DNA of 64,000 nucleotides from Phallusia mammillata (GCA_965637545.1 OZ281501.1:15252001-15316000); one strand, 5' to 3'; shown: positions 8,239 to 33,600, numbered from the stretch's first letter. Program-made: numbers and translations. The notes: a model not told the origin generated them from the sequence alone.

Positions 8239-11200
8239 TTAGGGATTGTCATTCACCGTGGATTCAATCCAATTTTGGACTTTGGAAACTTCTGTGTAAA
8301 ATGCAGGATACACAAATCCATCTCTGTGAACTTTAGCACATCCGTAGGCAAAACTGGCAATTCCAATTTGGATCCAACACGATTCTCCGGTATTCGGGTT
8401 CTTGTACTTTAAATCAAGGTTGTAACGTTGTTTATTTGCCTAAACCTGTGTCTTAACTTTTAAGCAAAAATGCAGGTCGAGCCTGGTTCGGGCCTCGTTC
8501 GGGCCTATTTTTCTCGTCACAACGGCCTATGTTTAAGTTGGCCAAGCTGTTGCGTTCGATAACGTTAGCTTTCAGGACCAGTCGGGATTTTAAAAATTAT
8601 TCGGCTTTGGACCGTGCTTTGTGCTTTTACTTTAATGTTTGGGCCTTAAAGTTTGGCAAGTTTACTCTTGTCGTATTATCACTGCTTGACCCGGCATTAA
8701 ATGCCTGACAATATTTTGTTTCTTCAAACAAATTAAATGATCACAGACTCAGCATTTAACACGTAAAAACACGTAAATAGTAAATACACAACTTTGTATT
8801 AACACCCAATTGCACATATACCTGTCGCATAAGAGGTACACCACTATCTCCCTGACATGTGCCAGACACTGTATTCAACCACTCGGGACTTTTCACACAA
8901 ATCATGCGATTAGTGTACGATACACGTGTTCCCGATATCGCTTCGATCCTTTCAACCCCTTCATTGCATCTGGTGATACAAGGGTTCAAAAATAATAAAG
9001 CATCACTAATCACCGCTTAAACACTGCCGCAACTAAACACTTTTACAAATTTTTTGACCCACAAGTGGTGATATGTAAATCTTGTCATTTAAATTCGTGC
9101 AGAAAAAATGACTTGCGCAAAACAAAAAGACGATTAAACTTTTAGGAGAATTTTCACTCGATTCCCTACCCTACTTTACGTTAAGAACTACTGGTTAACT
9201 CAAATGGTTTAGCATTAATAACGTGTAACAGAGCGCCAGAACCAAATTCGAACCATAAGGTCTGGTTAAAGGTTGAATAATTGATCAAGGTACGTTTTCA
9301 CGGCTTCATCACATTACTGTTATCAACTCAAACTTACGAGGCATCTGACTGGATTTGTTGGACTGCTTCCTTGAGACTGTACGGAATTGGGACCGTTCTG
9401 TTTTTAAACAAAGCCCATCTACCAAATCCTGTAACAATCAGAGGTATTCTGCTATCTTCAACGTAACGATCGGCAAGCCATCTTCCTGCATACAGAAAGC
9501 GTTGTAAATGCTAGCCTGCGTTGCAATAGCTGTCAAAACCAAACAAGCCAAATTCAAATTGTACATAATTTGTGGGACATTTTGAGGGAACAAAATATAT
9601 AGTCAGAATCAAGAGAGAAAATTTAAACTTGATTCGAAATTTCGGCAAATTTAAAGAGTCCCGTCGATTAAACAATGAGCTCTCGAGCGACACCCTGGTT
9701 TAATATGTAGCAACAATTGTTACGTCACCTGGTACCAAGTACACATGATAAGTGAAAACATGATAATTCGGTAAATGATTTTTACTTTTTTTTAGTCTAT
9801 TGTTTGTTCGTTTTTCTCGCAAGGACGGAATACTATCTAACGGCAAAGTCGGGATTTTAAACATTGATTATTACCAACGTTACTCAGTTGAACTTTCTCC
9901 AAGGCAGTGGTTCTTAACCTTTTTGCTGTGGTTTCCCACTAAAGTCAATTACCAACTTCGAATTCCCCCTCTGTTATTTTTATAGTCATGTTTTGTGCCC
10001 TACGTTAACAAAAAAAATGTAAATGAAATAATTTTGTTAGTTTAGAAAGTGCTTCTGTGAGAGATTAAACTTTTTTAAAAATTGAAGAGTCTGCTCTGCT
10101 TGCATTAGTCATTTGTTGCATCACAATCAACAATGGATAGGCTTTTGTTCATGCACAATAGCAAAGTCATTGATGGTTTTACTCTTCTCTGTGATGTAAC
10201 AAACGACCTTTGAATTTGTATGTGTCTTGTAAACCTTGATAAAATCAATCTAAAGTAACTTTCAACGGTTAGTTTAAAGCCGGATTTGACCCTAGTGCCC
10301 GAGTCTGCTCTTTGAAAGCATACCTAATTTCCCTCCGAATACATTAAATTTCCCACTAGTGGCTGTGCTATAATGCCTAACGATGGATCAACAAATTTCC
10401 CACCGGTTAAGAACCACGGCTCCAAGGGCTATCTCCGAATCATACATGAAATACCAGAAATATAGTGCAGTTGTGACAGAAGTTCTTGTTTACGGAGTTT
10501 TTATGATTTCTAGTGTAATTCTAATATATAACTACGAATTTCTGCGATATTTTAATGAATATTCACAATTGAAATGAACCGCTGTTTTTGCAAAGGTTTG
10601 TTGCACCTGGTGCTGCACGTTCTTTCCACTTGCCTTTCTTTTGACATTTGACATCCTCGGAGTCGCCATTTCCAAATATTTGGTTGCCATTGTGGTCCAC
10701 GTACTTTTCAATGGAGACACAAGTATTGCTGCAGGGCAGACATATTGGTTTCACATAGGGCGAAAGGGGGATAGTTCCGTCAAACTCTGGTCTTCTGCTC
10801 GACCAAACCCAACTTAATCCATCCCTGATGGCGTGAAGTGCCACACCGACTCGAATCTAAACAACTTGTCAACAGTAATCTCAACAACGACCTGGGCAGA
10901 CGTTGTAAGTTTTTACTTTTTACTAGTTAAGCAGTTTATGAAACAACAGTTTAGAGAGATAGTAAAGTTGTCAGTTTACTATTCATTTCGGATGAAAGGT
11001 AAATAAAAAATACTGTCAGTTTACTACTCATTTCGGATGATTTATCGGAAATGCTGTCAGTTTTCGGATCTGTTAAAAGCTTGATATTATATAGAAATGA
11101 TAACTTTATAAAAAAATCAACTTTTTAATTTAAGTTAAAAGCTAAATCAAACCGGATACCCTATTTCTGCATTTTGTTCAAATTGAATGTGAAATGTTTT

Positions 11201-12212
11201 GCTTTATCTCTAAGGCAATTGAAAGCATCACATTTCGTAAATGTTCGTTTTATTTTGGTGCTAAGCAAAATATTGACCACACTTAAGATAAAATTCTACC
11301 AACGCCACGTCATGATCAAAGTTGGTTCTTCCAGCGCCGCGATCTTCTCGCTCAAAATCTTGATGAATAGAAATTCTTCGCGGTTGGAAAACTTTCATGG
11401 CCGGGTTGATGGCTTGCCTCAGCCTTGGCCGCTCGAAAATACCTGACAAAAAGACAAAAGATCACTGATTTCGCGCCATCCGACAAAAGAATACGATACG
11501 ATATTACCCAAGTTGTTTATTACCTACTGCCACAGCCAGTCTGCTTGTCAGCCATTCGATGTCGGCCCAACCGTCAAATATATGAGCGGCTGTAAGGACC
11601 CATTGCTGATTAATGAGGCTTCCACCAGCGAAAATCCGTTTGAAGCTCTGTGGTTGTAAAGAATTACTGCGCGAAACCCATCGAAAATAAAACAGATTCA
11701 AATTGCATTTATTGTTGAATTACTATTTAGAAGCAAGTTTCTCAAAGTAATTTTAAAAAAATGTCTGGTAGTATGCAGACTGTGGCAATTTTCCGGCTTC
11801 TGACATTCGTATCAACTTGCACTACACCTAGTATTATGGCTTGTTTACCATCTTGTGTATTAAGGGTTCATGTTTTTAAAAAATACCGAAATAGCAAACC
11901 GCAGCACAACATAAACATATTATAAACGTAACGTAAAAACATAATGTGATGATAGCCCGCGCTGCAGACAAGTTTTAAAAGAAATGTATCGACCAAAAAG
12001 TTATTACCTAATTTTCAGAACAAATGATTATAACCGCTTTACACGGACATTGTTGTTAAAACTAACTTGGTAAACTGTTGATCCATCGGTAGGCATTATT
12101 GCAGCTTGCCAAGGCCAGGCTCTTTGGGCTTTACTTCCTCCGATGACGCGGCCAAACGCCTTTTTGCGGAGAATACTGTCCTTGTCGCCAGCTTGGCCGC
12201 ATCTCTTTAAAT
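8239..12212 (-). CDS. Gene A serine protease cassette (7 exons; H57/D102/S195 intact)
   Basis: FGR-VIGG...WPWQAA; [19 protein letters not shown]; DHDVAL|IRV; [10 protein letters not shown]; IVTGFG; [13 protein letters not shown]; [13 protein letters not shown]...YPAFYTEVS. Exon lengths 146/124/143/223/148/148/168. Confidence 0.95.
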
Positions 12213-15200
12213 CTGCGTGAGATGTTTATTGCAGACTGTTTTAGTTTAGATATGTAAAAGGTTTATGATGAAAACCTGATAATTGAATTGTAAGACAAGT
12301 TAGATAACACGTTCGTTACTTTTGCCCCATTTACACTGTTTAGATCAGGGGTATCCAACACGTGGCACGCGTGCCAAACGTGGCACGTAGAGCATTTGAA
12401 AATTGCACGCGAGCTTTTGCACATTCAGATCCTTGCCATAGGCGTACAGCTTCAAAAAAATGCCAGAGGTGCGACTTTTGATCAATAGCGCCGATACCTA
12501 TACCATGACCAGTATATATATACCCGTACGATACTTGTGCGGTATGCAACTATATACCTTTTGTGTGTTTTAGCATGTAGTTTCTGTCACATTATATTGT
12601 AAACAGTCACTTGATACATTTCTTTGTGTGGTTGGGGTGTTTGCTGTGCGTCTAATAACCTATGCACATGCTGAAAAGACGATTTGCCGAACCAGTCATT
12701 TTAACAACGATTTTGTTTTTTAAGAACTTGTTACGCAGGAAGTAAAATAAATCCAATTCACGTTTTAAATATAGCTGACCGTGTATCGCTGACGCCTAAA
12801 CTTAGGCCATCTTGAATCAAGTTTGGGCCGTTGCAGTGCTTTGCAAACGGACATTGAACACGGCTTAGGAATCGGTAATGCAAACCTACATAACAACATC
12901 TAAAAGCGGCTATAAACCCTTTGCATTGTTTAATGTTGGCCCATGGAATTTATTAACAAAAAATTACAATTATTATTGTTTCAGAAAGTTATTGCACCAC
13001 ATAATACCAAAACGTTAGTGAACGCGCCATGTTTATGTCGTAATAAAATGCCCGTTTATTTCGAAATAATTGTAATTGTTGCGTTTCAACAAATGTGTGT
13101 TCAATTAATTACGTGACTACAAACGCATTTGTATTTAGTTGGAAAAACATTTTAAACCGACGTAACTTGAGTTTTTGACGCACACAAAGTACTCCAGTGC
13201 CCCATATTTTTCTAACCGTTTAGTAGGGTTCTACATATTGGCCAAATATTCAGATTGAGCCCGTGCCGTTATGACGTTATGACGGGTTAAGACATGGTTT
13301 GGAAAAAGAACCAAAGGCTGGCACGCGAGTATATTTTCGAACGCGGTGTGTTCGAGTTGGACACCCCTGGTTTAGATTAAGCCGACAAGGCAACGGATTT
13401 TTTTATCAAAGGTAGTTGGCACACACATGCCGTTCACAAGCACACTTTCTGCAATTGAATTACAAAACAAAATTTCATGACAGCGATGCGGCAGTTTTCT
13501 TCAGCTATTTTGTGATGGTTTCACTCTTGCTTGCTTTCGTAGACAAAAGTTTTTAACCAATTAATCCGTAAACCAAGGGTCGGCAAACTGTTGCATGCAG
13601 CGGGCTAAAACCAAGATTTGCCAAGTCGGGGCGGGTCGTATGATTTTTTACGTTTGAATTGCGTTCAATTCTAGTCATGTTGTTTGAACTATCGAATACA
13701 GCTTAATTAGATGGGTTAGGTGATGTTTATTTGGCAAAGCATCTCAAAAATAACATGTCAAAACTGGACGAAATTTAGTCATTTTACGTTACCTTCGCTA
13801 ACCTTTTCTTGACACTTATATTACAAAAATTGGATTTAAGGCGATAAAGCTGACCACAACAATTATAAATACATATAACCAGTCGCGACCATGGCTGCGA
13901 AAGTTTCTGTAATTTTGGTCGCCGGGCATTGAACTGTTTTTTGTTGGTCACGCTACAAAGTGTTTCCGGCCCCTTAATTTAGGGCACTTGGAACGCTTTC
14001 GCAACCAAGTTACTTGCACTTGAACTTACTTATGTTGAGTTGTTTTCTCCTTGCTTTTTGGGGTACTTAAACGCGCTTGTTTCCGCTTGTACATTATATT
14101 TTTACTGATGGGGATATTGCTTTTAAAAAAAACATCTGTTTAACTTATTAAAATAATCTTCCACATCGCTGGCGATTAGGTTTTTACTATTTAGGTCCGT
14201 GGCTTGTGTCCTAGGAGTTGTTTGTTTGTTAGAATAACGATTGTGATAAAACAATAACATAGAGGTTGATAAAAAGGCAAAGACCAAGCGGAATTAACAA
14301 CCATGTTGTTCCTCAATATAACGTGGGCAGTTTCTGAAACGGTAGCTGGCCGGATAACTTTACTTGACAGACCTGATCCGAGGGCCGTGAGTTGCCGAAC
14401 CCTGGCGTAAACTTCAGATTCTTGCAGTAGCATTAGCGTGAGGCGAATATTTGTGTTGTCTGCTTCTTAATGCATGTTGACCAAAATTATATTCTGGTCG
14501 TGGTTTGCATTAGAGTTCACATTTGTTTAAATTGATCAACCGGCGATGAAAAAATATCGAGTCACAGTCTAATGGCCGCGATCACGATTTGGTAACCACT
14601 GGTTCGGTTGTTTATTGCAAACTGAGCACAACTAACCGTGTGCACATAAAAAACGGTTTTGGTTTATTCAAACATTTAATTTTATAATTAAAAGCGGGTT
14701 GGATCACTCACCTGTGGTAAAGTTTGCAATTTTGTCGAGGTAGGTGTTGATTAGATAATAGTTCTCCATGCGAATAAAGTTTTCGCGTTTGCTTACCAAC
14801 CGCCTCATCGCTATCTCAGCGTCCCGAGATTCCTGATCGAAATTTTTGCACGACTTGCATGCCGTGACAACGTATATCTAAGATGTAGCTGACCGCGTTA
14901 AATTGTGAGCAACATTTACTCAAAAGCAAAACATTTCTGCAATTGCAACAAATAGGCAAAATGTATCTATGCGTTTATATGCATATTTAGGCAATTATTT
15001 GAATATGATGGTCTTCTATTGTTTCTCGGTTAACTTTTTCTATATTCTAAACTCAAATCATCCAATCCTAAGTTGTTTACTGCTTATTTAAGAGCTAGAC
15101 TCGCTCAGTATTGAAATGTGAAAAATAACTTTCCACTCGACTACAAGTTGTTCGCCCACCGGCTTTAAAATCGCTAAAAAATGAACAAAAAAAAACCCTC

Positions 15201-18200
15201 CCAAAAACAGTTTGCACAAACTTTGAAACACAAATTTTTAAACTGGTCACCTCGAGAACATGACCAAATTCAATTAGCATCGTAGTTCTGGTATGAAACG
15301 GATTTTCTCCTTCATTTGTTTTTCCTGCATGAAACAAATTACCTAATTATGCAACGTTTTAAGACAAATTTTGAGAAATAACTGATGCAACATATTTCTT
15401 TGACCTTTTAGTAAAAAGTTTTGATGCCATACTCTTTTTCTGATGTTTTAAAAGAAATGCCAATACCTAGTTTTGTAGTGACCTTATTAATGACTTGCAT
15501 TACTAAACAATAGTTGTTTAGTTTCAATGACGAGAAACAAACAAACAATGCAAAACTACTTACCATCTGTAAATAAAAAGAAATGTCGTTCCTTGTCGGG
15601 ATCATTGCGAAAGCTTATTACCAATTGTTTGCGAATTTCCTTTAGCGCTATGTTAGTTGCCGTGCAACCTCGTAATATTTCGCTAAAAAGTCCTGCAAAA
15701 AATACATTTTTCTGAAACACAACAAGTCTTACAAAGAAAATTGGCAACTACAGCGCGTTCAACCATGATCCACCAACTGTTTTGCGGTCCAACATCTTTC
15801 ACCATTGTGTAGCATTTCTCTGCTTAGTGGTTGTTTTGGTGCTATTGTTTCGCTAGATTCTCGTTTACTAAACGAAATAAAACTTATACAACTTAACCTA
15901 TGAATTTCTCACCGCTTCTATAGTCCCGTAGACAATCATCAAGTTGTTCAAGAACAGCTGTAGAGTTTTGTTCATTATCTTGTAAACGAATCCTCGCTTC
16001 GAAATCACTACCAAACACCATTAATCCATAATTGATGCTAGCTTGGTCATAATTTGAAAGCTACAAAGGCATGTTACAGTTAATTTAGTCGTTTTTATGT
16101 GCCGCTTTCGAATATTTAACGATCATACCCTTTGTACTAAGTTCTTTGCAAATGCGATTGCGTACATAAACTGGACATCTTTAATACTGTCGGACGCATC
16201 AAATATGAAAGCAATTTCGTGGTGTTTGCTCTCCGTCGTGGAAATCGAACGTCCAAATCCACGCTGAGGGAGGGCTGCAACACTTCCAGCAAGTTTACGG
16301 AGCGAGTCGCTTGCACTGTCTGGGTACCTAGGGTCTGTTAATTGTATAATCACAAGTTAGAAATACTATACTCATGGGTGCCGGCACGTAGCTGCAAGAG
16401 GGGTCAAAAACGAACGAAATCGAGAAATTGAAACCAACGAGTCAAAAAACGAACAAATAGCATCTAAAAAAGAAGAACAGTGCGTAAATGTCATGCTCAT
16501 ATACATTTGTATAAATTTAAAAACGCACATTTTTGGTTGACTGAAGTAAAGAAATGTATTTATTAAAAGATTAGTAGAAAGACATGAATTTAATACACAC
16601 AACTCGCACTGTACGGGATTCGTCAAAGTCATCACCCTCTCTACTTCCGTGAACTGGTACTCCGGGGTCAGGGCATTTACTTGGTTGTCCTAAAGAAGGT
16701 TAGTATTATTTCTTGATTAGTAATCTGATAAAAACGTTTTTACAGTAAAAATTTTTTGATGCATAAAATTTTCATAAAATAGTTAGCAATTCGCGTCAAA
16801 TAGTTAGCAATTAAATACCATGCTACAAGCCTTGTTGAATGTTGGCAAAGTGATAAAGAAAGATTTACAATTAACAAAACTATGTTCTTGATTGGTAAAT
16901 GTGACCTATTTGTTTTCTTATGAGAGGTGTGTGGTAAACGTTTTGTTTAAACTTGCAGACGTTTGAGCTTGCGGAAGTATTTCGAATGAACTACATTCGA
17001 GAACTATTCTTTCCTTTAATAAAATTGGCAGTGATTGCGGATGCACTAAAACGTTTTGAACGAGCTGCACCTGTTGTTGTGTAACAGTGTGTTTGGGATT
17101 GTTGAGTTTGGCAAACATATATTTTTATAGTTACAAACTTGCTCTTGTATAACTTAATTTGGGAGCGTGTTTGCTTTACAAAACATGATTTTAAGTTTGA
17201 CATAAAGAGCCTCATACAAACACATGCACGTTTATAAACTTTGCTGACTGATTAATGCAAGAATATAAGAATTATTTTGCACTGAGAAAAGCAGCAACAA
17301 TTATTTAAAGAGAGCCCGAAAGAATAATTTTATTAAAAATTTGTCGTTCCAAACTAGGTCACACTAAAATATGTACTTTGTCTCGGCCCTCACATCGGGT
17401 AAGGCAATGTTTAAATCTTACCCAACATTTGACATCCCGTCAATAATCCACTCCAACGTCCGTTTTCCATACACGTACGGTTCGCCGCTCCGCTCAAAAC
17501 GTAGCCTGACTGGCAGCGAAATCGCACGGTCGAATTAACAGAGTAAGTACCGTTTCGTCCGGATTCAAGAATTAGATTTCGGCGATCAAGGTGCCTTGTT
17601 GGATCACCACAGAAGATTTCTAAAATTGTTGTTTAAAATACCTAAGTTAAATTATGATTGAAAACTTTCCTAAAACTTGCTTTGGGGTTACATATAGGTT
17701 GTTTCAAAAGTTTGTACCACTTGGACATTTTAGACACCAACCCAACCGTTTAGCCATTTGACCAAACACAACCTCAGTTTGACACACTAAAAATATTGTG
17801 AAATAGAATCTAATGACAGACACATTGGCTAACTTAAGGTTGCAAATTATATTATTGTTTAGTGCAAATCTATGTGATGGAAAGCACAAGTTAAAAAATA
17901 TATAGGTGGATTGATTTACCAATTATAGTGGTACATCTAAAATAGTGTTATTTCACAACATGTTACGTCATAATTACCACATGTCCTCTGCCAAGATTTA
18001 AGCAAACACCAAAAATTACTAAAGCCTTAGTAACCATGCGGCAAGATTTGGATTGTCAAGTAACAATCTTCATTCTTACATCAGGCGTGTGTAATTCTGG
18101 GATCGACCTGTCTGACCTGCAGGGGCATGTTTGTTTCATTATGACGTTTGGTGCCAGCCACGCCCAAAGTTTCAGTTTCAGCTTTTCGCAAAACATACGT

Positions 18201-21200
18201 TTGTGCTTAACTTGGGCAGTTGGAAAGCTTGTTGGTTGGAAAGCTTTAGTTTAACTTGCAAGATTCGTGTTATGTCAGAAAAGGCATTAACTGGAAATAA
18301 CGTTAACGTGTTTACGGTAGGTAACTCATGTAGCTGTTTCATTGCAATGGTAGGGTACTGGTGCTGTAGCATGCGACTGTACAAACCGTGTTAACCAGTT
18401 AACTATTTTAGCAAGTTTTTAACACTGCGTGAAATCATTCTGGTGAATGCAAACTTTTACATTAACTTTAAAGTATAAATGTACTTCGATATGCCAAATA
18501 TGAACATGGATTTTTAGTTTGTTTAAACATGCGCTTACGTTTGGAAAAGCATAGTTTTCGTATGAAATGGAATATTTTACATGTACGCCATTGATCGCGT
18601 AAAATGTGTGTCAGTTTTAATTCAGAAGCTTTCTTAAGATTTACATTTAACTTAAATCTTTGCTTCTGTCAGTCATTAAAGTGAAAAGAAAAATTCGTGG
18701 CATTCAAGGTGGACAAAAAAAAATGCTTCCTAGAATTTTCGGATTTTACCCAATATGTCACAATCAGTTCTTTGAAAAGAGCCAAAGAACACATTCAGGT
18801 AATCTTTTCGTAAAGTACAGGTGCATTTTCAACACAGCAGTATTGTGACGCCACAAACACATAGTTAGTGTAATTGTGATTATTATCGTTGATTTAACAT
18901 TAAACTCGTAGTCAAGCTTTATCGAAACTAAACTATATTGATTGCCTGCGTGGATTTCGTTAAATACCTCACGCTTTTAATTTCTCTTGGCCTGTAAGTA
19001 GCTGTTAATATACTTACATGTTTTTCTTTTTGGTGATAAAAACATGGTATAGAGCTAGGCCAAATCTATAAATCAACATACACTTTCTGCTCCAACCAAC
19101 CTTCACATATCACTGGATCTCCATACCATTGACCGGAACCTGAACATTTGTGTGCAGCGTCTCCACTTGCCAAGTAGTAGCCGGAATCACAAAGATAGTT
19201 GGCAATCCGGTTTACCCGTCATCTGTGTATTCGACTCTTGTGTGTGTCCTAGATGGCGCAGCGGAGCAATTCACATCTAAAACATGCTCATTAAATAAAC
19301 ATGTTTAAAACAACTGCATCGGGATTTGAAACGTCTCTTACGTCTGGTTTTTAGTACAATTTTTATCTCAACACCATCGCCCACAGTTATACCATTAAAC
19401 CAACACAATATTTTATAACTTCTTAAAACAGTTTTAATCAAGTTTTTTTGGCTTGTTTTTTAAATCTCATATTTTCGTTACGTGATTATACCTCTAGTTA
19501 AAGGTTGTGTTTAAACCAGAGAGTCGAACGCGCCGACCGGTTTGAGCGGTTTACTTTATTAAACCTGAATGGAAATTACAATTTTAGTAACCTCCTATCC
19601 GGAGTCGAACCCTATATTTTGTTTAGTGTTGAACCGAACCCGCAAAAATGTAGCCTGTTTAATCTTTCGTGATATTTTTTTCAAAGCAGCGTAACGAAGA
19701 ACAGCTAGGGTGTGTCGAAACCAACGTACTTGAAGCTTGTCCGCAGACACGGTTAAAAACAATGCTATATAGATAATGGATAATAATAAAAAAGGGGGGA
19801 TTGTAATAGAAAAACCGCAAAGGTAATTTGCCCGAACCGGAAATAACCCGAAAACACCTGAATCAAAAGCAACACAAAATGAACCAGAACCCCTAAAACA
19901 AGCGGTTCGACTCCCTGGTTTAATCAAATATATTGGAAATTTCAAGTTATGTATACTTGTGTAGCAACGGTTACTTGTTTCTTTGTTTGGTGTATTTTAT
20001 ACCCAAACATTTCAAAATTCATAGAACCTAATGACTTTAATGTTGACTTACGGGGGTCGACACACTTTCTTCCACATGGACCATCACACATGCATCTCTG
20101 CGTGCCAACACAATCTTCATCTGTGACACAATCTTCTCCACAAGTCAGATTGTAGAGTGTTGCACTGTAGCTATCAGGTCGACACTTAACTGCAACAACA
20201 GAGCTTAATTTGAACGCATGGTTTTTTAAGGTATTTTTTTATTATTTTGCCTTGAATTGAGTTGGGTCTTACACCAAGCGAAATATTAAAACGTAACGTA
20301 AACGCAGTGATGAACCGAGTCGGATTTGTATAGGTTTTGCCAAATCAACTAAATCATCTATGAAGTCGTACGCTACGTGTTTATAGTAAACAAGTTTAAC
20401 TATCAGGCAACCAACTTAGTTTCATTATAAATTAACTCTCCAGCTATTTCATAATGACTTTTAGTCGGATGGAGGCAAAACGATAAAGTTTTAAAGATCT
20501 TAAATTGAACGCGATTTTAATTTTTGCGTAGTTGGAAACATAATTGAGTTCCCTATTAAGCAGAAAAGACGCGTGTCACGCTTTACATTTGTGTTCGTAT
20601 CAAAATCGGTTTGGGCCCAAACGAATGTTCGCGAAAAAGATTGATTCGGCCAAAAAATGTACATCACAAGTATAATAGGCCATTTATTACTTCATCGTAA
20701 AGCAATGTAAATAAATTGGTACCTTGTTACATTGACAGTGCAGTGTAGCACATCCAACTAACATTACTATTCTTTTGCAAGCCTTCGTAAGAGTGTAACG
20801 TATTTTTACCTGTACAGCGCACTTGAGCATCTGTCCACCTTTTGCGCGAAGTACATCGAATTTGAGGACCGATTGAGACCATGCCGGCGGGGCAAGAATA
20901 TTCAACAAAATCATCAAACTGAAAATAGTCTGTCACCCGGACCACGGAATGGTTGACGAAACGATAAATCTTGAATCCAGTGCTTCCGTGTGCCATCGGT
21001 GGATTTCCTTCGCACTCCAAATCTGTGGATTAAAGAATGGATGAAAACTTTAACTGCCAGAAATTCACGTAAGCTCGCTAATTACATTTTATCCGGAACC
21101 AACAATTATTACCATCTTGATAATTTCACAAAAAAAAAATACACTGGTAAGTTTCATTGACATTTTGTTTAATTCGTTTGATAGAAGACTAGTTGTATTT

Positions 21201-22711
21201 GAACTTAGCAAAATTATAGTAGTAGGCCTATTTGTGGTTTATGTCACTTATCAACGAATTTAGTTATAGATTTGTGCACTTTTGAACTATTCATTAAATT
21301 TGGATCCACAGTTTTGTTCAAATGCACGTAATACACAGACTACGGTATGGTAAAGCAACAAAATAACAGGAGCCGTTATCGAAGTAATTGGTAGTTTGCC
21401 CGATTGTTCAAAGCAAAAAGATACTTACTTGGATTAAAACAGGACATCCCACAAAGACTGTCACACCTGCAACGCTTCTTTTTTCTGCAATCAAAGTCGG
21501 TAGTGCAAGGTTTTCTACAGTCTTGTCCTGTAGCTTGAGCCGCATCAGAATCACGCTGAGGGCATTCCCCTACATATTGATCGATTTAGGGGTATAAACA
21601 TGAATTGACATTCAGCATCTAAAAGCTGAAATTCACACAGATCTGAGTTTTACAGAAGCCTTCTCTTTTAAAGACGTTTAATTAACAAAGATTGGGAACT
21701 AAAACAGGCCGGTAAGCTGCCGCAAAACCATGAATACACAATAAAGAATGAATACGAGTCAAAGAACATCATAAACTGACAAGCTTGGATTTAAGATCTA
21801 ATTCTTTAACTTGTTACAAAATAGACTTTAGCAATTTGTAAAATATTCAACATTTAATATATTTAACAATTATGCTAAAATTTAATAACAAGCATAGCCA
21901 AAATCTTGTTTTTGTGCAAACTCAATTAGCCCTTCAATAATTTTGAAATCTTACCAAAAATGCACAGGAATCTACACATGATTCGAACGTACGACCTTGC
22001 GACTAGAAAGCAATTGCGCTAGTCATTTGTACTTCATGACCGGAATATATGTATTTTTTCGTACTTTAACTTGTAATTTGTTAAAACATATCTAAGTGTT
22101 TTTGTACTCACCGCATCTCGCGTATTCATAGCTTTCATCTTCGTTGTTAAAACAGTCGTTCGTTCCGTCACACAACTGTTCATCGTCGAGACAAATGTCA
22201 CCAGGGCATTGAAACCGACCATCACGACATAAGCGTGAGCCTTGTGTTGCTGAATAAATTTAACCCATTAGGTAAGTGGTTTGGCAAAATACAAATTTTT
22301 GGCCGATACACACAATAATTAGTGTTTTTGTTTATATATTCCTTGCAAGCATACGTTAATGTCCAATTCAGTTTTTTGTGTGTGTCATATATTTAATTGA
22401 ATAAGGCACTGACAATGCCTATTACTTAGGTAAAATAAATATGTCTAAATAAAACAGTAGACGCCCCAGGGTTTTTCATTCTGTTATTATATGCGACTGT
22501 GTCGTACTGAGTCTCTGGTGACTCGTGATTTACAGTATACTACACACAGTTGATCTTTTATGTACAAATTGTACCGTAAAAACACTACAAATAGCTATAC
22601 ATACAAATTTTTTGTGTACAAATTGTACCTTTATAGCGCTACATATTAATATGATGTTCACTTACATATGACACAAAGAGCAAGAACTGCAAGTGCCAGA
22701 GGGCTATGCAT
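8239..22711 (-). CDS. Gene A: complement factor B/C2-like mosaic protease (signal-LDLa-WAP-CCP-WAP-CCP[frameshift]-CCP-CCP[truncated]-vWA-serine protease); possibly a partial pseudogene
   Basis: Exons: 22711-22666 signal [16 protein letters not shown]; 22249-22112 LDLa; 21569-21429 WAP; 21022-20810 CCP; 20189-20052 WAP; 19276-19101 CCP (176 nt); 17619-17422 CCP; ~16690-16600 half CCP; vWA 16334-16129, 16060-15913, 15692-15564, 15324-15251, 14877-14712; protease 12212-12067, 11647-11524, 11442-11300, 10856-10634, 9485-9338, 8969-8822, 8406-8239. Splice phases chain correctly apart from the two damaged exons. Confidence 0.88.
9905..10419. mobile_element. hAT MITE in a gene A intron
   Basis: TIR CAGTGGTTCTTAACC / GGTTAAGAACCACGG. 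TSD CTCCAAGG at 9897-9904 and 10420-10427. Confidence 0.88.
12346..13369. mobile_element. Non-autonomous hAT element in a gene A intron
   Basis: TIR CAGGGGTATCCAAC / GTTGGACACCCCTG. TSD GTTTAGAT on both sides. Confidence 0.9.
14712..16334 (-). CDS. Gene A von Willebrand factor A domain (5 exons) with intact MIDAS
   Basis: GFGRSIS...[10 protein letters not shown]; GLMVFGS; [10 protein letters not shown]; FFLFTDG|KTNEGENP; IYVVT. All GT-AG with consistent phases. Confidence 0.92.
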
Positions 22712-23940: not shown

Positions 23941-24185
23941 ACAAAACATATTACCTCGACAACTTGATTGGGTTCTTTTAATATAGTTTTTGTAGAGTTT
24001 TAACAGACTTACTAACACAGGAGACGGTTCTTGGGTTGACATTCCATCGTTTGGTTATTTTGCAGGTATATGTGACAGAAATCTGATATCTTATGCTGTA
24101 AATCTTATAACCGTTTCGGCATATGTAACTGACTCTAGTTCTAGGAAGGTGATATCCATGATTTTCACGAGGGTATGTGAACGTT
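23941..24185 (-). pseudogene. Decayed, deleted copies of the two CCP exons at 38080-38579
   Basis: YPRENHGYHLPRTRVSYICRNGYK...RWNVNPRTVSCV vs [24 protein letters not shown]...[12 protein letters not shown]. First Cys and acceptor are lost, and only ~20 nt of the next exon's 3' end remains at 23955-23974. Confidence 0.85.
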
Positions 24186-24199
24186 TCTTTCCACAAATT

Positions 24200-25330
24200 T
24201 TTGATACAATTACTTTAAACTCAAGGCTCCTTTAATTGTTTCCGATTTCTGGAAAAGGGATTCATGCGCGCAGTATGGATCGCATGATGATGCTTTTGGG
24301 CGTTTGAAGTACATAACCGACAAAAGCCAATCAGAACTTTGATTTAGTTTACAGGGATAAACAATGTACCAGTTGAAAGTGGATTTATCAAAGTGGTATA
24401 ATACACATGTGCGAGTGTATACAATACAGCAACCCAACCGTACGACTTTTGCACATTGACTGACCGCATATCATGTAAAAACAATATTAGCGATTTGCTT
24501 ACCGATAAAAATCTTCTTGCAGCATTTCGCAATTCAACCCATTTTTTTCATTTCCACATGATTTCATCAAATTCTGTGTTTCAGCTATAAAAAGCAACTT
24601 TACTACACAACGTAAACATTTTTTCCACATCAATCGCAATTGTTTTTCATTGGTTTGTTTTCAAAACTGCAAAAAAACTTTTCCACCACCTTTTCAATCC
24701 AACTGTTGACACTAAAATGCTGCAAAAACACTCAGCAAAACGAACTTCCATTTAGTGCGCGGGTCTTGCAGGATAATAAAAATCAACGTAGTTTGCCGAT
24801 AGCATAAAGCGCGAGTCGGGCACAAAATTAAGATGTTTTAATTATGCAAGTGACTTGACGTTATGCAGCCTCTTTTTCAATTGTGTTTTTTAAGTGAAGT
24901 GTGTTAAACTCGATTGGCGTTCGTTTTATCAACGACTAAATTATATTAATTAATACTAAAATGTTCATGAGGTTTTGTTGCCTTAATGCAATTGCGCTTG
25001 CTGTGCGGTACATTTTTGTCGACCAAACTGGGAGAACATGGAATCATGATTTGTTTATAGCACCACATGCAGTGACGTAAATCTCCTAAACAACATGTGT
25101 ACAATAGTATGATTGTCGGATCACTGACTGCACAAATGTAGTTGTAACACCAGAAAAACGCCTCATAATATACAGCCTTGATAAAGAAGTAGGATGTTTA
25201 TTCAACTATTTATTTTTTACGAATCGTAAGTTTTTGTTCTGCGTCACGCGTATGACTGATTCGATATTTTTTATGTCAAAAACATTGTATATCCCCACTG
25301 CAAAAATAGGCTTAGATATAATGTGTGGTT
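24200..25330 (+). repeat. Dispersed repeat family F (about 1.1 kb)
   Basis: Colinear with 57745-59255 and, inverted, with 1865-2235. No termini identified. Confidence 0.8.
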
Positions 25331-26358: not shown

Positions 26359-29300
26359 TTAGGGATTGTCGATCATTGTGGATTCAATCCAACTTTGAAT
26401 TTTGGAAACCTCTGTGTAAAATCCAGGAAACACAAATCCATCCTCGTCAACGTGAGCGCATCGGAAACCAAAACTGACAATTCCAACTTGGATCCAACAC
26501 GATTCGCCGGTGTTCGGGTTCTTGTACTTTAAATTAAGGTTGTAATGTTGTTTGTTTGCCTAAACTGGAATCTTATCCTTATCTTTTAAGCAAAAATGCA
26601 AGTCGAGTCTGATACGGGCCTATGTTTCTCGGTCCAGATACGGCCTGAGTGTAAACATTGGCACTTAAATTGGCCTGTCTGCCAAGCTGTCGCTTTCGAT
26701 AACGCTGGATTTCATGACTAGTCGGGACTTCAAAATTATTCGGCTTTGGACCGTGCTTTGTGCTTTTACTTTAATGTTTGGATCCGAAAACTTGACAAGT
26801 TTACAATTCTTATCATACAGTTACGGCTTGCCCCGGCATGAAATACCTGACAAAGATTTTTTTCTATAAACAAAATAAATGAACACAAACTCACCATTTA
26901 ATTCGTAAAATAACACGCCGATACACAACTTTGTATTATGCTAACTACCCCATTGCACATATACCTGTCGCATAAGAGGTCCACCGCTATCTCCCTGGCA
27001 TGTGTCAGACACCGTATTCGACCCATCAGGACTTTTCACACATATCATCTGATTAGTGTACAATGCACGTATTCCTGATATTGCTTCGATCCTTTCAACC
27101 GCTTCATTGCATCTGGTGATACAATCATTCAAAAATATTAAAGCTTTACTTATCCCCGCTTAAAACACTGCCGCAACTAAACACTTTTACAATTTTTTTG
27201 ACTCACATGTGGTGATATGTAAATCTTTTTTATTAAATTCGTGAAGAACAAACGACACACACAAAACAAAAAGACAATTAAACTTCTGAGAGTATTTACA
27301 CTCGATTCCCTACTTTAATTAACGTTAAGAACTACCGGTTAAGTCAAATGATATACGTCACTTATACGTCACTTTCACAATGCTAAACCAATGGAAAACT
27401 ACCATTTAAGTCAAATGGTTTAGCATTTTGAAAGTTACGTATAACACAGCGCCAGGACCAAGTTTGACCATAAGGTCTGGTTAAAGGTTGAATAATAATA
27501 ACTGGCCAACAGAATTTTTGGTGCCCTCAATATTAAAACTGATGTTGACTAATTTTGGGGTACTGATTTCAAAAATCATTACGGTTTTCTGCAATCAGGT
27601 CACCTTTTTAAGTTATTTACAAAATTGAAATTTATGACCATATTGATTCAATGACTTTAAAATTACTCTTGTATGTGTTCGATAAATTTTTGTTACATTA
27701 TACACAACAATTTCCCATATTGTAGTTAATTTCATAGCATGAATATGTGTTCTATGTTTATGCTCTGTCTAAAAATGGTTGGTGCAGGCTAGTGGTAACT
27801 ATACACTATACGCGTTTTATGGAGTGATTTTCAGACTAGTAAAGCAAGGTGGTAAAACTAAAATTAGTAATGGCTAGGTCATATATGAGCTGTTGCATCA
27901 AAAACCAAGATGGCCTATGCTACATTACTAGTGAATATCCTTACAACACAACCAAAAAGAAAAAAAAATCTGTATCAAATGCATGTCTTGCACACTTAAA
28001 AGTGGATGTGAGGTTTAGGACAAGCAATGGGCTCCACTTACCTAGTGTTGATTGGAATATTGCAGTGATGGACAGAAACAGTAGAAAGAAACTAAAATTA
28101 CTAGAAAGAGTACATAACTAAGTTATTAGGCGGTCTGAAAAATTTGGTATAAAATTGAGTATAAAGCTGCACTTCCCTTACAACGTAGGGAATATAAATC
28201 ACGAGAATTAAGCTGAAAGGTTCCAATAGGATATCAGTGAAATGGAACGTATTAGGGATTAATAATGTGATCCTGGCTAATTACGGATGGTAAATTAAAC
28301 GGGACGATATTTGCTGCCTTTTCCGTTACAGAATTACATGTGTAGGCCTGTACCCGATATACCTGACAACTTACAAATTTGAAACTATGTTTCGTTTCTG
28401 TCTTGATTTTTGTTTGTTAAGAGTGTCCACCGATTTTTAAAAACATTTTAAATTAAATTCGAAATTTTGTTCTTGCAATAACGTTAATTCCGAATAAAAT
28501 ACTCAAAACCAGTTTCACTACATACGGATTGTTTTTTTTTTAAGCTTGGACGTACCATAACAGGAAAACTAGAAGTGATACAGATAAACCGATTGCATTT
28601 TTGACATCAGGGCAGTAGAATTAGTCAAATCAGTTAAAACATTACTGGGGCCTGTGAGTGATCAAGGCGAGTTCTCACAACGCTTCATCACATTACTGTT
28701 ATTAACTCAAACTTACGAGGCATCTGATTGAATTTGCTGGACTGCTTCCTTTAGACGGTACGGAATTGGGACTGTATCGTTTATTGACGAAGTCCATTTA
28801 CCAAATCCTGTAACAATGAAACGTGTTCTGCTTTCTTTAACGTAGCGATCGACAAGCCATCTTCCTGCATAGAGAAAGCGTTAAATGCTTACCTGCGTTG
28901 CAATAGCTGTACAACCAAACAAGTCCACTTTAAATTCTACTGAATTTGTTGCACATTTGGACGAAACCTGTTTTGCCAGAATCAGGCGGAAAATTCATAC
29001 TTGATTCAAATTTTTCAAAAACGTTTGAAAACATGATGATTCTATATGTGGACATTTGTAAAAAATTTCTATAGTTTGTTTGTTTTTCCCGCAAGGACGA
29101 AACCATATCTAACGACAAAGTCGGAATTTTACAAAGTGATTATTAACAAGTCCGGGTTAACGCGCATTTTTTGTTGCAAGCGTGTTTTGTATACCGTCAT
29201 TCCACTTGCCTTTCTTTTGACATTTGACATCCTCGGAGTCGCCATCTTCAATTATTTGGGTTTCTTCTTGGTCCACGTACTTGTCAATGGGGACACAAGT

Positions 29301-30630
29301 ATTGCTGCAGGGCAGACATATTGGTCTCACATAAGGTGAAAGAGGGATAGTTCCGTTAAACTCTGGTATTCTGGTCGACCAAACCCAATTTATTCCGCCT
29401 CTGATGGCACGAAGTGCCACACCGATTCGAATCTAAACATCGTTTGGTTCTTATTACAATATCAACATGTTTGTTTTATGTTATATCTCTTAAAAGCTTC
29501 ATATCATAGCAGTAATAAGTTTATAAACAGCAACTAACAAAGGTTTCCTTTTATTTTAGTTAAAATTAAGCTAAATAAAACAGGATGACGTTTTTTTCAC
29601 GCATTTGGTCAAATTTAATGTGACATTCGCTTCGTCGTCACAAATCGTAGATGTTTGTTTTATTTTCTGCAAAGCAAAAAATTGACCACACTCAAGATAA
29701 AATCGTACCAGTGCCACGTCATGATCAAAGTTGGTTCTTCTAGCGCCGCGATCTTCTCGATCAAAATCTTGATGAATAAAAATTCTTCGCGGTTGAAACA
29801 CTTTCATGGTCGTGTTAATGGGTTTTCTCGGCATTGGCCGCTCGAAAATACCTGACAAAAAATATCGCAGATCTACAGGCACCATGCGACAAAGAGACAA
29901 AACGATATTAACCAGACTGTTATTACCTACTGCCACAGCCAGTGTGCTTGTCAGCCGTTCGATGTCGGCGTAGTCGTCGAATATATGAGCGGCTGTAAGA
30001 ACCCATTGCTGATTGATGAGGCTCCCGCCAGCGAAAATTCTTTTAAAGCTCTGTGGTTGTAAAGAATTACTGCTCAAAACTGAACGAAAATCAAACAGAT
30101 TTAAATTGTATTGGTAGATGAATTACTAGTTAGACGCATATTTCTCAAAGCAAATTAAAAAAATGTATGATAGTATGCTGACTGTGGTTATTTATCGGCT
30201 TCTGACATTCGCATCACCCTGCATTACACCTAGTATTACGGCTTCTTTGTCAGTTGTTAAAAGGGTTCATGTTCTAAAAAATAATGAAACAGCAAATCGC
30301 AGGACAACATAAGCATTTTTATAAATGTAAATAACAACATAATGTGATGATAGTCCGCGCTCCAGGTACACGGTCATTATAAAGCGCCACGGAGAGAAAG
30401 ATGTATCAACCAAAAAGTTACTATACTTAGTTTTTAGAGCAAATGATTGTGACTTTTAACGCGGCCTTTGCTGTTGAAACTAACTTGGTAAACAGTTGGT
30501 CCATTGTTAGGCATTACTGCAGCTTGCCACGGCCAGGCTCTGGTTGCTTTATTCCCTCCGAGAAGGCGACCCAACGAAGCTTGACGAATAATACTGTCCG
30601 TCTCCCCTGCTTGGCCGCATTTCTTCAAAT
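26359..30630 (-). CDS. Gene B serine protease cassette (7 exons, intact, trypsin-like D189/G216/G226)
   Basis: LGR-LLGG; [19 protein letters not shown]; DHDVAL|IRI; [13 protein letters not shown]; [13 protein letters not shown]...FPGFYTEVS. Exon lengths identical to gene A. Confidence 0.96.
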
Positions 30631-33600
30631 CTAGAAGAAAAGCAGTATGTTCACATTGTGTACGTGACGTTTACACTTTAATTTTGTTAAAATTTGGGCG
30701 CATTTTTTATATGCATGGTATGTTCATTGCAGACTGTTTGTTTTAAGTGGAAAAGGATTAGGATGTAAAGCTGGTTATGCAATTTAATGAAAAAAAATTA
30801 TAACAGTGATCAACGAAATATTGAAAAAAAACACTTCTGGAACCGTTGGGACTCCTTTGTGCTTTATTTTACCAAATGTTTTCAGTTGGTTGATTTCATA
30901 AAATCGTGTTGACTTTGGATACTTACTTATGCACTTTGCTTCTGTTCCCGACCACTTTCTGTCGCTGCGACATGACCGAAAAGATTCACCCCTTAAACTA
31001 TAGCCCTGGTTGCAAACATATTGAGCTCGAGAATTGTATTTTCTTGTTCTTTCCCGGTAGGTAACTCTTCCATTGGGTATTCCTGATAGCGGTGGACATT
31101 CTGCATCTGTATAAATAACGCATATTGATATGCGTAATAAATATAGTGCATTGCTGAGCTCTACTTATGCAGTATAGCGCTATAATTGTACACTGGATTT
31201 TTCACTTGGGATCAAGAAAAGCTAAAGACACAATACATCAAGGAGTATCGTGATATATACTTGGATTAAAGCACGACATGCCACAAGCGTCATCACAACG
31301 GCATCTCTTTAGAGCGCCCCTACAATCTGCGTCCGATTGACAAGGTTTTCGGCATCTTCTGCCCTCTTCAACCAGGTCCATTAATCTTGGGCATCTTTGT
31401 AAATCAACTGCAAAATAAAATCAGTAAACTCGAATGCCCAGCATTTTAAGATGTGATTTTTGAAATTAAAGTTATTTTTTGGTCTTACAGTACTGTACTT
31501 TAATGTCGTTCAACTGCAATAAAGCAGAATTGGTTATGAGACGTAAAAGTTCAGACTTGTACAAAAAGAGAACTAACTTAGGCAGATATTACAGTACCGT
31601 AATGAAACGGGCATGTTTGATTTCAGATTTAACGGACACACCAATTTAAACTTTACGGCAACCAAGTTCTTCATCAAAATGCTTCCAAATGGTGTTTCGA
31701 ACCACAACAAATTTTTGCTTCACTAGCTTTTTGTGTGTCGTTAAACCGCATATCAAACCACGTCATAGAATTAAAGTTTTACTGGTGTAAAGCTATTGCG
31801 GGTTAACGCATTTTCAATCTTATCCGCTTGTCACCAAAACCACTCAAGGTGCATTCTTTTGCCAAATACTTTCTTGAGAACAGTTTTACAAATTCTAGCA
31901 GTTGCTGTGTTATAATCAGGATTTCAATCGATGGCCGTAAAAATAAGGACAACCAAAAACCAAACTTTCATACGAAACGAAACAAACGTTTTTGAGCAAA
32001 TTTTTGCATGTAAACCAGCGATGGGATACATCGTATGCTACATATTTTGCCAGAAATCTGTTCCAGAAACCCGTTTAAAGGAAATACTTCTAGGTTTACT
32101 TTTACTTGTAGCAGGGATTGATTGTCATTTCAGTACGGTTGTTCGTTGTAGTTGTTGAAAATGAGACAAAATAAGGAACCAGGTCAAAAACAAGGACAGT
32201 TCTTAGAAATATGGACGACAAACTTTTCTAAGGCACCGCCTTTTAAAATAAGGACAAATCTGACAAATAAGGACCGTATGGCAACCCTGCTTATAAACGT
32301 CCTTCACAGTCATTTTTTCTTTCATAAAAATTTACTGGGCCACAGAATTTTTGTGTAAGGAAAATGGGCCACGAAAGAAAAAAAGTTGAGAACCACTGCT
32401 CTAATAGAACACGATGAGATTGGACAACGTCACAATTGACATTGTCATTCGTTGCTCAGAGATTTATCGCTGATTGGCCAGACGGTTTTGAACTTTTCTT
32501 AGCTTCACTGAGCCCTACGTTTTTTAACTTTCTTAATTAACCGTATTAGCAATCACGTGACAACTGATCGAGAAAGTTTGTTGCCTCATTAATCAGCACA
32601 AAACGATATCACGCACGACTAAAACCCAAAAAACTGCTGTATTCTACTATACCAATCTTGGTTTGTCAAATTTAAAGCAAACACTGTTGCATGCAGTGGC
32701 GGCTCATGCGTAAAACTTTTAGAAAAGCCACATTTCTAGTTTTCTAGCCATTGTTTAGTGTAAAAAACAAGTAATACAAATCTTAATTAACAACTCCATT
32801 GTGACGTAATTTTTGTTACCCAATAATGTACACGAGTGTAAACAGCAGACGGTATTATTTGTGTATTTGGTTTACTTGCACAGCGACGGACCAAACTCAA
32901 TAACATACAGGAATAATGTGGCACAAAAGCACACGTAACACAAACTCGAAACGACGCGTTTGTAAATAATCGTATATGTAAAAAAAACAGTAATAAATTA
33001 GTCGAAAAAGGTCGAAGTATTTCAGAAGGACAACATTTAAGAAAACTGGTTATAACACTGACCACTAACTAACACACTTGCTATTTAGTTATTTATATGA
33101 TAATGTTTCATTTACCTTATAGTCACAGCCAGTGTTTTCAACATATTTTATAACACTTCACAGATTATTGCCACACAAAAAACTAGCCATAAAGCTTTGA
33201 TTTGTATCATAATTGACAAATTTTATGACCACATTACATTCATGTCAAAATTTGTTTATTTAAACATCTTTTCTTTGAATTTTTGTGTACAGACTATTAA
33301 TTGTCTTTCGGTCTCTTAACTCTTAGACTTGATTCTTTATTTGGTGGCAAACAGCTTATAATTCCTTTTTTTAGTGCAAAACACCTCCATGCTTGAAAAC
33401 ACTCTCACTTAAATTTAAACCATATTATTAAACCTTGTGCTTCCTTTTTACAACCAAACTGAATCATGAAGTTATAGTTTGAACAAAATAATTGATATCT
33501 TCTTCCTTGATTTCCAAATGAAAACTAAGAAACTGTTTTTTTTTTCTATTTAGTTCTGGCACTGCAAGTGCAAGTCTTTTGGAAATAATGGTGGTCCTTA

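What the first reader, a model, noticed from the sequence alone, without database searches (positions are those of the whole stretch)
8239..22711. Factor B-like gene carrying WAP domains and two activation sites
Seen: CCP-vWA-protease core with an intact MIDAS (DASDS, T, TDG). There is a basic site just before the vWA (GFGR-SIS, positioned like Bf QKR-KIV) and a canonical zymogen site (KAFGR-VIGG) with D194 retained. The N-terminus is LDLa-WAP-CCP-WAP. Known: mammalian Bf/C2 lack an Ile16-type activation peptide and are activated only at the Ba/Bb bond. Inference: this protein may need two cleavages or may preserve an ancestral activation mode. I do not know WAP modules from any Bf.
Basis: partly seen in the sequence, partly recalled or inferred. 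Interest (0 to 1): 0.7.

Follow-up and report, generated by a model that had tools for sequence, protein, structure and literature searches.

The report
Damaged duplicate of sea-squirt factor B
This is a second copy of the sea-squirt complement factor B gene. Its WAP modules and its two cut sites are normal for the family. This copy carries a frameshift, a lost half-exon and a changed protease pocket, so it is probably a recently disabled duplicate.

Summary
None is special to this gene.

- **WAP modules.** Both align cysteine for cysteine in Phallusia mammillata Bf and in the published Ciona Bf-1 and Bf-2.
- **Two sites.** An Arg bond before the vWA plus R|[IV]xxG before the protease occurs in about 22 of 26 Bf-like proteins, from ticks, spiders, a scorpion, a sea urchin, ascidians, a shark and amphibians.

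The idea that the layout is ancestral is supported.

An intact, collinear paralog lies 228 kb upstream. Against it, this copy has:
- a net 1-bp deletion in the CCP2 exon, giving TAA at 19214-19212;
- a 107-bp deletion that removes half of CCP4 and its splice donor;
- Asp189Gly, Gly197Val and Gly216Ala in the protease.

Two DNA-like runs match the assembly across both lesions. Transcription of this copy is unproven. Skipping the damaged exons would keep the frame.

The scan had already reported the intact paralog (s1-375410) and a trimmed neighbour (s1-344583), with the same conclusion about WAP.

The parts
22666..22711 (-). Exon 1: start codon and signal peptide ([15 protein letters not shown])
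   Evidence: Matches residues 1-15 of P0001. Donor is GTAAGT.
22112..22249 (-). Exon 2: LDLa module, phase 1-1
   Evidence: Pfam Ldl_recept_a, 28.1 bits. 41 of 45 aa identical to P0001.
21429..21569 (-). Exon 3: WAP module 1, 8 Cys, phase 1-1
   Evidence: Pfam WAP, 26.5 bits against a cut-off of 20.8. Cys count. Aligns with Ciona Bf-1 and Bf-2.
20810..21022 (-). Exon 4: CCP1
   Evidence: Pfam Sushi, below threshold at 18.3 bits. 67 of 69 aa identical to P0001.
20052..20189 (-). Exon 5: WAP module 2, 8 Cys, phase 1-1
   Evidence: Pfam WAP, 27.1 bits. Cys count. Aligns with Ciona Bf-1 and Bf-2.
19101..19276 (-). Exon 6: CCP2, 176 nt instead of 177. A net 1-bp deletion at about 19214-19218 puts TAA in frame at 19214-19212.
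   Evidence: DNA alignment with the intact paralog. Translation check. Runs X1 and X2 show no indel difference here.
17422..17619 (-). Exon 7: CCP3, phase 1-1
   Evidence: Pfam Sushi, 44.3 bits. Boundaries.
16597..16689 (-). Exon 8 remnant: first half of CCP4. A 107-bp deletion (joint 16605/16602) removed the second half and the donor. The only in-frame substitute donor is T|GTATTA after 16597.
   Evidence: blastn against the paralog. Donor scan. An X1 contig covering 16200-16636 spans the joint with no differences.
16129..16334 (-). Exon 9: linker with GFGR|SIS (R|S at 16251-16246) and the start of the vWA with MIDAS DASDS (16200-16186)
   Evidence: The position of the site is conserved in about 22 of 26 Bf-like proteins.
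14712..16060 (-). Exons 10-13, the rest of the vWA: 16060-15913, 15692-15564 (MIDAS Thr and TDG), 15324-15251, 14877-14712
   Evidence: Collinear with P0001 residues 481-652. GT-AG boundaries. One putative RNA contig splices 16129|16060 exactly.
12067..12212 (-). Exon 14: linker Cys (12201-12199), KAFGR|VIGG (12150-12136) and WPWQ
   Evidence: The motif is conserved across the family.
8239..11647 (-). Exons 15-20, the protease: 11647-11524 (His57), 11442-11300 (Asp102), 10856-10634 (ICLPC; GC donor), 9485-9338, 8969-8822 (Gly189 at 8863-8861, Asp194-Ser195, Val197 at 8839-8837), 8406-8239 (Ala216 at 8349-8347, Ala226 at 8304-8302, stop codon)
   Evidence: Pfam Trypsin on three exons. Boundaries. 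Residues checked. Comparison with 14 reference proteins.

Best explanation
The locus is a tandem-cluster duplicate of the ascidian complement factor B gene. The species is a Phallusia-like ascidian. The domain plan is LDLa-WAP-CCP-WAP-CCP-CCP-CCP-vWA-serine protease.

How the intact family most likely works (inferred, not shown): the CCPs and the Mg-binding MIDAS of the vWA dock on C3b. An upstream Arg-specific protease cuts the linker at GR|S, which corresponds to the Ba/Bb bond. A second cut at R|VIGG frees an Ile16-type N-terminus that pairs with Asp194 and switches on a canonical Asp189 trypsin-like protease. The two chains stay joined through the linker Cys and the first Cys of the ICLPC motif.

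This copy has most likely been disabled recently. It has a frameshift with an immediate stop in the CCP2 exon. It has lost half of the CCP4 exon together with its splice donor. Its protease has replaced three residues that the rest of the family keeps: Asp189, Gly197 and Gly216. It also has Ala at position 226, which varies in this family. The remaining 19 exons are still open, so the damage is young.
For: Identity: exon by exon, the gene is 80-97% identical to and collinear with P. mammillata 'C3/C5 convertase' P0001. It is collinear through the introns with an intact copy at G000:C8:15009482-15023947. A model of the vWA-protease part of P0001 finds only human factor B, Bb, C2 and C2a as its first 28 PDB matches (E 2e-27 to 1e-19), each over about 600 aligned columns.

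Lesions: frameshift and TAA; 107-bp deletion; ORF of 246 aa with all exons. Two DNA-like runs show no indel difference over 14700-20200.

Relaxed constraint: 4 gene-specific changes fall on 35 columns that are invariant in 13 other Bf-like proteins, against 0 in the paralog and 0 in P0001. There are 69 lineage-specific aa changes against 40 in the paralog. Lineage dN/dS is about 0.33-0.50 against about 0.21-0.22.

Family-wide sites. Both cut loops are low-confidence, flexible stretches in the model.
Against: Apart from exon 6, the gene is one open frame of 929 codons. Pairwise dN/dS against the paralog is 0.31, not 1. The damaged exons are otherwise well kept: the second part of exon 6 is 37 of 37 aa identical to P0001. 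All N-terminal module exons are phase 1-1, so skipping exons 6 and 8 would restore a clean modular protein. One putative RNA contig fits exons 9-10 at 97.6%. The protease substitutions were not checked against reads. X1 and X2 may come from the same animal as the assembly. No cleavage or C3 binding has been shown for any ascidian Bf in the papers I could read.
Confidence: 0.55

Rival explanations
1. The gene is still in use. The spliceosome skips the frameshifted CCP2 exon, and either skips the truncated CCP4 exon or uses its cryptic donor. The product would be a shorter LDLa-WAP-CCP-WAP-CCP(-half CCP)-vWA-protease of 898-929 aa. Its S1 pocket (Gly189, Ala216, Ala226) would no longer select Arg, making it a factor B duplicate with a new specificity or a non-catalytic role.
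For: Skipping E6, or E6 and E8, leaves a single ORF that runs to the natural stop. All module exons are phase 1-1. The neighbouring paralog beyond the window end has lost modules too (note s1-344583; L010). Sea-urchin Bf is reported to splice its SCR exons alternatively (title of Terwilliger 2004, seen in the reference list of PMC1988830). dN/dS is below 1. The triad, Asp194 and the MIDAS are kept.
Against: There is no RNA evidence for such joints. The only putative RNA contig covers exons 9-10, and part of it fits the paralog better. Gly197Val sits next to the oxyanion hole and is Gly in 14 of 14 relatives. With the cryptic donor, the half CCP would leave an unpaired Cys.
Confidence: 0.25
2. 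The gene is intact, and the frameshift and the deletion are errors of the assembly.
For: Long-read assemblies can carry single-base indels. The rest of the gene is open.
Against: Contigs of two other runs, X1 and X2, cover all 30 bins of 14700-20200 with no inserted or missing letters. One contig spans the deletion joint without a difference. The change at the frameshift is not a simple homopolymer slip. A 107-bp loss is not a typical polishing error.
Confidence: 0.05
3. One reading: an unusual factor B, set apart by WAP modules and by needing two activating cuts.
For: The motifs are real. No paper I could search names WAP modules in a Bf or discusses a second site.
Against: Both features are shared by the other ascidian Bf proteins examined, and the two sites by most invertebrate Bf-like proteins. 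This copy is the damaged one.
Confidence: 0.05

Closest known systems
Phallusia mammillata 'C3/C5 convertase' A0A6F9D9Y8 (P0001), and the intact paralog 228 kb upstream in this genome
   Same: Same 20-exon plan and same module order. 80-97% aa identity per exon. Same GFGR|SIS and FGR|VIGG sites. The paralog is collinear through the introns.
   Different: This copy has the CCP2 frameshift, lacks 32 aa of CCP4, and has Gly189, Val197 and Ala216. It also has Ala226, a position that varies in this family.
Ciona intestinalis CiBf-1 and CiBf-2 (Yoshizaki et al. 2005; here P0019 and P0020/Q5H875)
   Same: WAP-CCP-WAP-CCP-CCP-CCP-vWA-protease. GGR|SIT before the vWA. FGR|VLAG and FGR|VLNG before the protease. 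No Cys42-Cys58 pair.
   Different: The Ciona proteins as held here have no LDLa module. Pfam scores their WAP modules just under threshold (20.0 bits, or no hit). They share about 30-34% identity with the Phallusia protein. A published table lists only CCPs for Ciona and LDL_A for Halocynthia, and no WAP (PMC4714745).
Human factor B and C2
   Same: CCP-vWA-protease order. MIDAS. An Arg-X bond about 16 residues before DxSxS (position of the human bond is from my own knowledge). Linker Cys and ICLPC motif. Best structural match for the vWA-protease unit.
   Different: Human Bf has no R|IVGG-type N-terminus (my own knowledge). It has Asn189 and Asp226 (PMC7914634). By sequence, the ascidian protease half is closer to kallikrein and thrombin than to any Bf chain. 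Human Bf has no WAP or LDLa.
Sea-urchin SpBf/Sp152 and arthropod Bf-like proteins
   Same: Extra CCPs. Both sites are present, for example SR|IVGG in Lytechinus and GR|ILGG in ticks. Alternative splicing of the SCR exons is reported for Sp152 (title only).
   Different: No WAP or LDLa. Tachypleus C2/Bf and Lineus Bf lack the second Arg.

Membership tests
Complement factor B/C2 family (CCP-vWA-serine protease) | CCP (sushi) modules N-terminal to one vWA domain | tested here: met
   Pfam Sushi on exons 4, 6 and 7, and VWA on exons 9-10. Two of the four CCP exons are damaged.
Complement factor B/C2 family (CCP-vWA-serine protease) | vWA with a complete MIDAS (DxSxS, Thr, Asp) | tested here: met
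   DASDS at 16200-16186. TAT and TDG in exon 11.
Complement factor B/C2 family (CCP-vWA-serine protease) | C-terminal chymotrypsin-fold protease with the His-Asp-Ser triad | tested here: met
   Pfam Trypsin. His57, Asp102 and Ser195 checked.
Complement factor B/C2 family (CCP-vWA-serine protease) | vWA-protease unit folded like Bb/C2a | tested here: met
   Tested on the close relative P0001, not on the window's joined model. Mean pLDDT 73. The first 28 PDB matches are all factor B, Bb, C2 or C2a.
Complement factor B/C2 family (CCP-vWA-serine protease) | Arg-X scissile bond in the linker ahead of the vWA | tested here: met
   GFGR|SIS, 16 residues before DASDS. The column is conserved in about 22 of 26 relatives. 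Actual cleavage is not testable here.
Complement factor B/C2 family (CCP-vWA-serine protease) | Binds C3b and cleaves C3 | not testable with these tools
   Needs biochemistry.
Vertebrate-type Bf/C2 protease domain | No Ile16-type activation site. S1 charge moved from position 189 to 226. | tested here: not met
   R|VIGG is present. The family has Asp189. This copy has Gly189 and Ala226.
Ascidian Bf (CiBf type) | WAP-CCP-WAP-CCP-CCP-CCP array ahead of the vWA | tested here: met
   Exon order is collinear with P0001.
WAP four-disulfide core | Pfam PF00095 above the gathering score, with eight cysteines | tested here: met
   26.5 and 27.1 bits against 20.8. 8 Cys in each module. Inhibitory activity is not testable.
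Duplicated (unprocessed) pseudogene | Reading frame broken relative to an intact paralog | tested here: met
   Frameshift with TAA, and an exon deletion.
Duplicated (unprocessed) pseudogene | Neutral evolution (dN/dS near 1) | tested here: not met
   0.31 pairwise. About 0.33-0.50 on this lineage, from small counts.
Duplicated (unprocessed) pseudogene | No productive transcript | tested here: inconclusive
   The listed RNA-guess runs hold 0.00-0.02 of the sampled words. One ambiguous contig in X6.

The most novel reading that the evidence does not exclude
The copy is not dead. It is expressed by skipping its two damaged phase-1/1 exons, which yields a five-module factor B-like protein. Its S1 pocket has lost the Arg-binding Asp189 (Gly189, Ala216, Ala226). 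That would be a complement protease duplicate caught in the act of changing substrate or turning into a non-catalytic C3b binder. Alongside this, intact ascidian Bf, like most invertebrate Bf, would be a true two-cut zymogen, and vertebrate Bf/C2 would have lost the second cut.
Probability: 0.15. Interest if true: 0.5.

Novelty: new member of a known kind. Interest (0 to 1): 0.25.

Why it matters
For this locus, little: it is one more, and a damaged, member of a known ascidian factor B cluster.

The comparison made along the way has some value. Most non-vertebrate Bf-like proteins, and some shark and amphibian ones, keep a canonical R|IVGG site and Asp189. The activation-peptide-free Bf/C2 protease of mammals therefore looks derived. 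A two-cut activation of invertebrate C3 convertases can be tested directly by N-terminal proteomics.

The two 8-Cys modules of ascidian Bf are WAP-type. No paper I could search says so.

Tried and rejected
- **Single-exon searches.** PDB searches gave only weak, uninformative hits. An Atlas look-up of the vWA exon gave only generic vWA clusters.
- **First full-length word search.** With P0001 as query it was swamped by sushi-repeat proteins. Restricting the words to the vWA-protease part fixed this.
- **Big representative search.** With one protease exon it found only 5 proteins, but these included P0001.
- **Papers.** Yoshizaki 2005 and Jing 2000 are not held. Five searches for WAP modules or a second activation site in Bf found nothing.
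- **RNA.** No listed holder is on record as RNA. Runs X3-X14 hold 0.00-0.02 of the sampled words. The one X6 contig is a mosaic that cannot be assigned safely.
- **Micro-intron rescue.** A 50-nt micro-intron (19216 to 19165) would rescue the frame, but it would delete Cys2 of CCP2, so I rejected it.
- **Fragment alignment.** The alignment misplaced exon 18. I redid the count pairwise.
- **Joined model.** The joined spliced model of this gene was not sent to any search or fold tool. Exons were searched by reference, and P0001 stood in for folding. Exons were joined only inside scripts, to score candidate splice junctions against P0001 and to count frame and stops.
- **Assembly gap.** The N run at 36671-36870 was left alone.
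Full report
**What is in the sequence**

The region holds one multi-exon gene on the minus strand. Stop-to-stop translation and Pfam scans of the open segments by reference give, in order:
- LDLa (28.1 bits);
- WAP (26.5 bits, cut-off 20.8);
- sushi;
- WAP (27.1 bits);
- three further sushi pieces;
- vWA and trypsin-fold exons.

A splice-site scan guided by the closest protein gives 20 exons, from ATG 22711 to TAA 8239. All boundaries are GT-AG except one GC donor, which the paralog shares.

- GFGR|SIS, 16 residues ahead of DASDS;
- the MIDAS Thr and TDG;
- KAFGR|VIGG;
- His57, Asp102 and Ser195;
- Asp194.

**What it is**

One protease exon, searched against the representative library, found a 1018-aa Phallusia mammillata protein, P0001 (UniRef 'C3/C5 convertase', nr 'CiBf-3...'). 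P0001 maps on the window exon by exon, in order, at 80-97% identity. Pfam finds the same LDLa, WAP, sushi, VWA and trypsin set in it.

An AlphaFold model of its vWA-protease part (mean pLDDT 73) has human factor B, Bb, C2 and C2a as its first 28 PDB matches, each over about 600 columns. By sequence alone, the protease half is nearer to kallikrein and thrombin.

The genome is a Phallusia-like ascidian, but not P. mammillata itself by this measure. Earlier scan notes also call it a sea squirt.

**Are the WAP modules unusual?**

No. Both 8-Cys modules align cysteine for cysteine in P0001 and in Ciona Bf-1 and Bf-2, and one does so in the shorter Clavelina protein. Pfam scores them just under threshold there: 20.0 bits in Ciona Q5H875, 18.7 in Clavelina and 18.8 in P0001.

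A published domain table lists only CCPs for Ciona and LDL_A for Halocynthia (PMC4714745). No paper I could search links WAP with Bf. What is new is the name of the modules, not the modules.

**Are two sites unusual?**

No. I aligned 26 CCP-vWA-protease proteins from ascidians, ticks, spiders, a scorpion, a horseshoe crab, a nemertean, a sea urchin, a shark and two amphibians. About 22 have an Arg bond at the Ba/Bb position, and 22 have R|[IV]xxG in front of WPW. Tachypleus C2/Bf and Lineus Bf lack the second Arg.

All 14 reference proteins in a smaller set (13 of the 26 plus P0071) also have Asp189. Human factor B has Asn189 and Asp226 (PMC7914634).

The linker Cys ahead of the site and the ICLPC motif are present. 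From the known c1-c122 disulfide of this fold (my own knowledge), the two chains should stay joined after the cut. Both cut loops are low-confidence, flexible stretches in the model.

The two-site layout is therefore the common non-vertebrate state. The vertebrate Bf/C2 protease looks like the derived one. I found no paper that says this, but key older papers are not held.

The window's own genome has an intact copy at C8:15009482-15023947, on the plus strand, 228 kb upstream. The two copies are collinear through the introns, at 72-89% DNA identity.

Against that copy, the window gene has three kinds of damage.
- **CCP2 exon.** It has a net 1-bp deletion. The frame reads ...EYTDDG and then TAA at 19214-19212.
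- **CCP4 exon.** A 107-bp deletion removes the last 32 residues of CCP4 and the original donor. The only donor that keeps the frame is a weak T|GTATTA.
- **Protease.** It has Gly189, Val197 and Ala216, and Lys for the Arg of VRPICLP. These four positions are invariant in 13 other Bf-like proteins and unchanged in the paralog and in P0001. Position 226 is Ala here and Ser in the paralog, so it varies.

With all exons the ORF ends after 246 aa. Without exon 6 it is 929 aa, and without exons 6 and 8 it is 898 aa, each time running to the natural stop.

**Are the lesions real?**

Contigs of two DNA-like runs cover every bin of 14700-20200 with no inserted or missing letters. One contig spans the deletion joint. 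These runs may come from the same animal as the assembly. They are a check on the assembly, not on the population.

**Is the copy under constraint?**

- Pairwise dN/dS against the paralog is 0.31 (N-terminal modules 0.19, vWA 0.35, protease 0.43).
- With gene 2 or gene 4 as outgroup, this lineage gives about 0.50 and 0.33, against 0.21-0.22 for the paralog. The counts are small.
- Lineage-specific amino-acid changes number 69 here and 40 in the paralog.

Together with the otherwise well-kept damaged exons, this fits relaxation or a recent loss. It does not fit an old pseudogene.

**Is it expressed?**

No listed holder of the stretch is on record as RNA, and the RNA-guess runs of the species hold next to none of its words. 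One 346-nt contig of run X6 joins 16129 to 16060 exactly as predicted and fits the window at 97.6%. Its other 100 nt fit the paralog better. Expression of this copy is therefore unproven.

**Verdict**

- Most likely (0.55): a recently disabled duplicate.
- Second (0.25): still used, through skipping of the damaged phase-1/1 exons. This has a precedent in the reported alternative splicing of sea-urchin Bf SCR exons (title only) and in the trimmed neighbour gene (s1-344583).
- Assembly error: 0.05.

The family-level two-cut mechanism is an inference from conserved motifs. No cleavage has been shown.

**Method note**

The joined spliced model was not sent to any search or fold tool. Exons were used by reference, and P0001 stood in for folding. 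Exons were joined only inside scripts, to score candidate splice junctions against P0001 and to count frame and stops.

Noticed in passing
window 26362-35338 (-): Gene 2 is a Bf-derived paralog with no vWA. Its WAP exon (31241-31420) and CCP exon (30787-31164) lie only about 120 bp upstream of the protease's first exon (30437-30670). The site reads SLGR|LLGG and Asp189 is kept. Its protease exons are 68-85% identical to those of gene 1. A CCP exon at 23981-24214 may be its 3' end.
   Followed up: partly
window 51524-57395 (-), perhaps on to 38069: Gene 3 matches the Phallusia protein P0015 (745 aa; WAP-CCP-CCP-protease followed by C-terminal CCPs; no vWA) at about 80% identity. Further P0015-like CCP exons lie at 43753-38069.
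   Followed up: partly
window 63213-63383 (-) and L010: This is the last exon of a fourth paralog that runs beyond the window end. In L010 it has a vWA (DVSES). It has lost the Arg of the first site (QGHAPW-ISTTE). It keeps FGR|VIGG and Asp189.
   Followed up: partly
P0137, P0113, P0118: Proteins annotated 'factor B-like' in a shark, a frog and an axolotl have CCP-vWA-protease with a canonical R|IFGG, R|ILGG or R|IFKG site. Mammalian Bf/C2 does not. They may be a separate vertebrate lineage.
   Followed up: no
G000:C5 23.1-27.1 Mb: At least a dozen loci on another contig match the Bf-type ICLPC protease exon at about 50% identity. This points to a large family of related proteases.
   Followed up: no
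window 10632-10633; paralog (L009+L011) about 14030: The intron after exon 17 has a GC donor (AAAG|GCAAGT) in both copies.
   Followed up: partly
window 11524-11647 and ascidian proteins P0001, P0019, P0020, P0018: Ascidian Bf proteases read GGGSL...TAAH[ILV]F where the other Bf-like proteins read CGGS...TAAHC. The Cys42-Cys58 disulfide is therefore missing across the ascidian family.
   Followed up: partly
window 15951-16264, run X6: A putative RNA contig fits this copy at 97.6% over exons 9-10, but its next 100 nt are closer to the paralog. It could be a chimeric contig, or gene conversion in another individual. P0001 is likewise a mosaic: nearer this copy in exons 4, 6b, 14 and 15, and nearer the paralog elsewhere.
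   Followed up: partly
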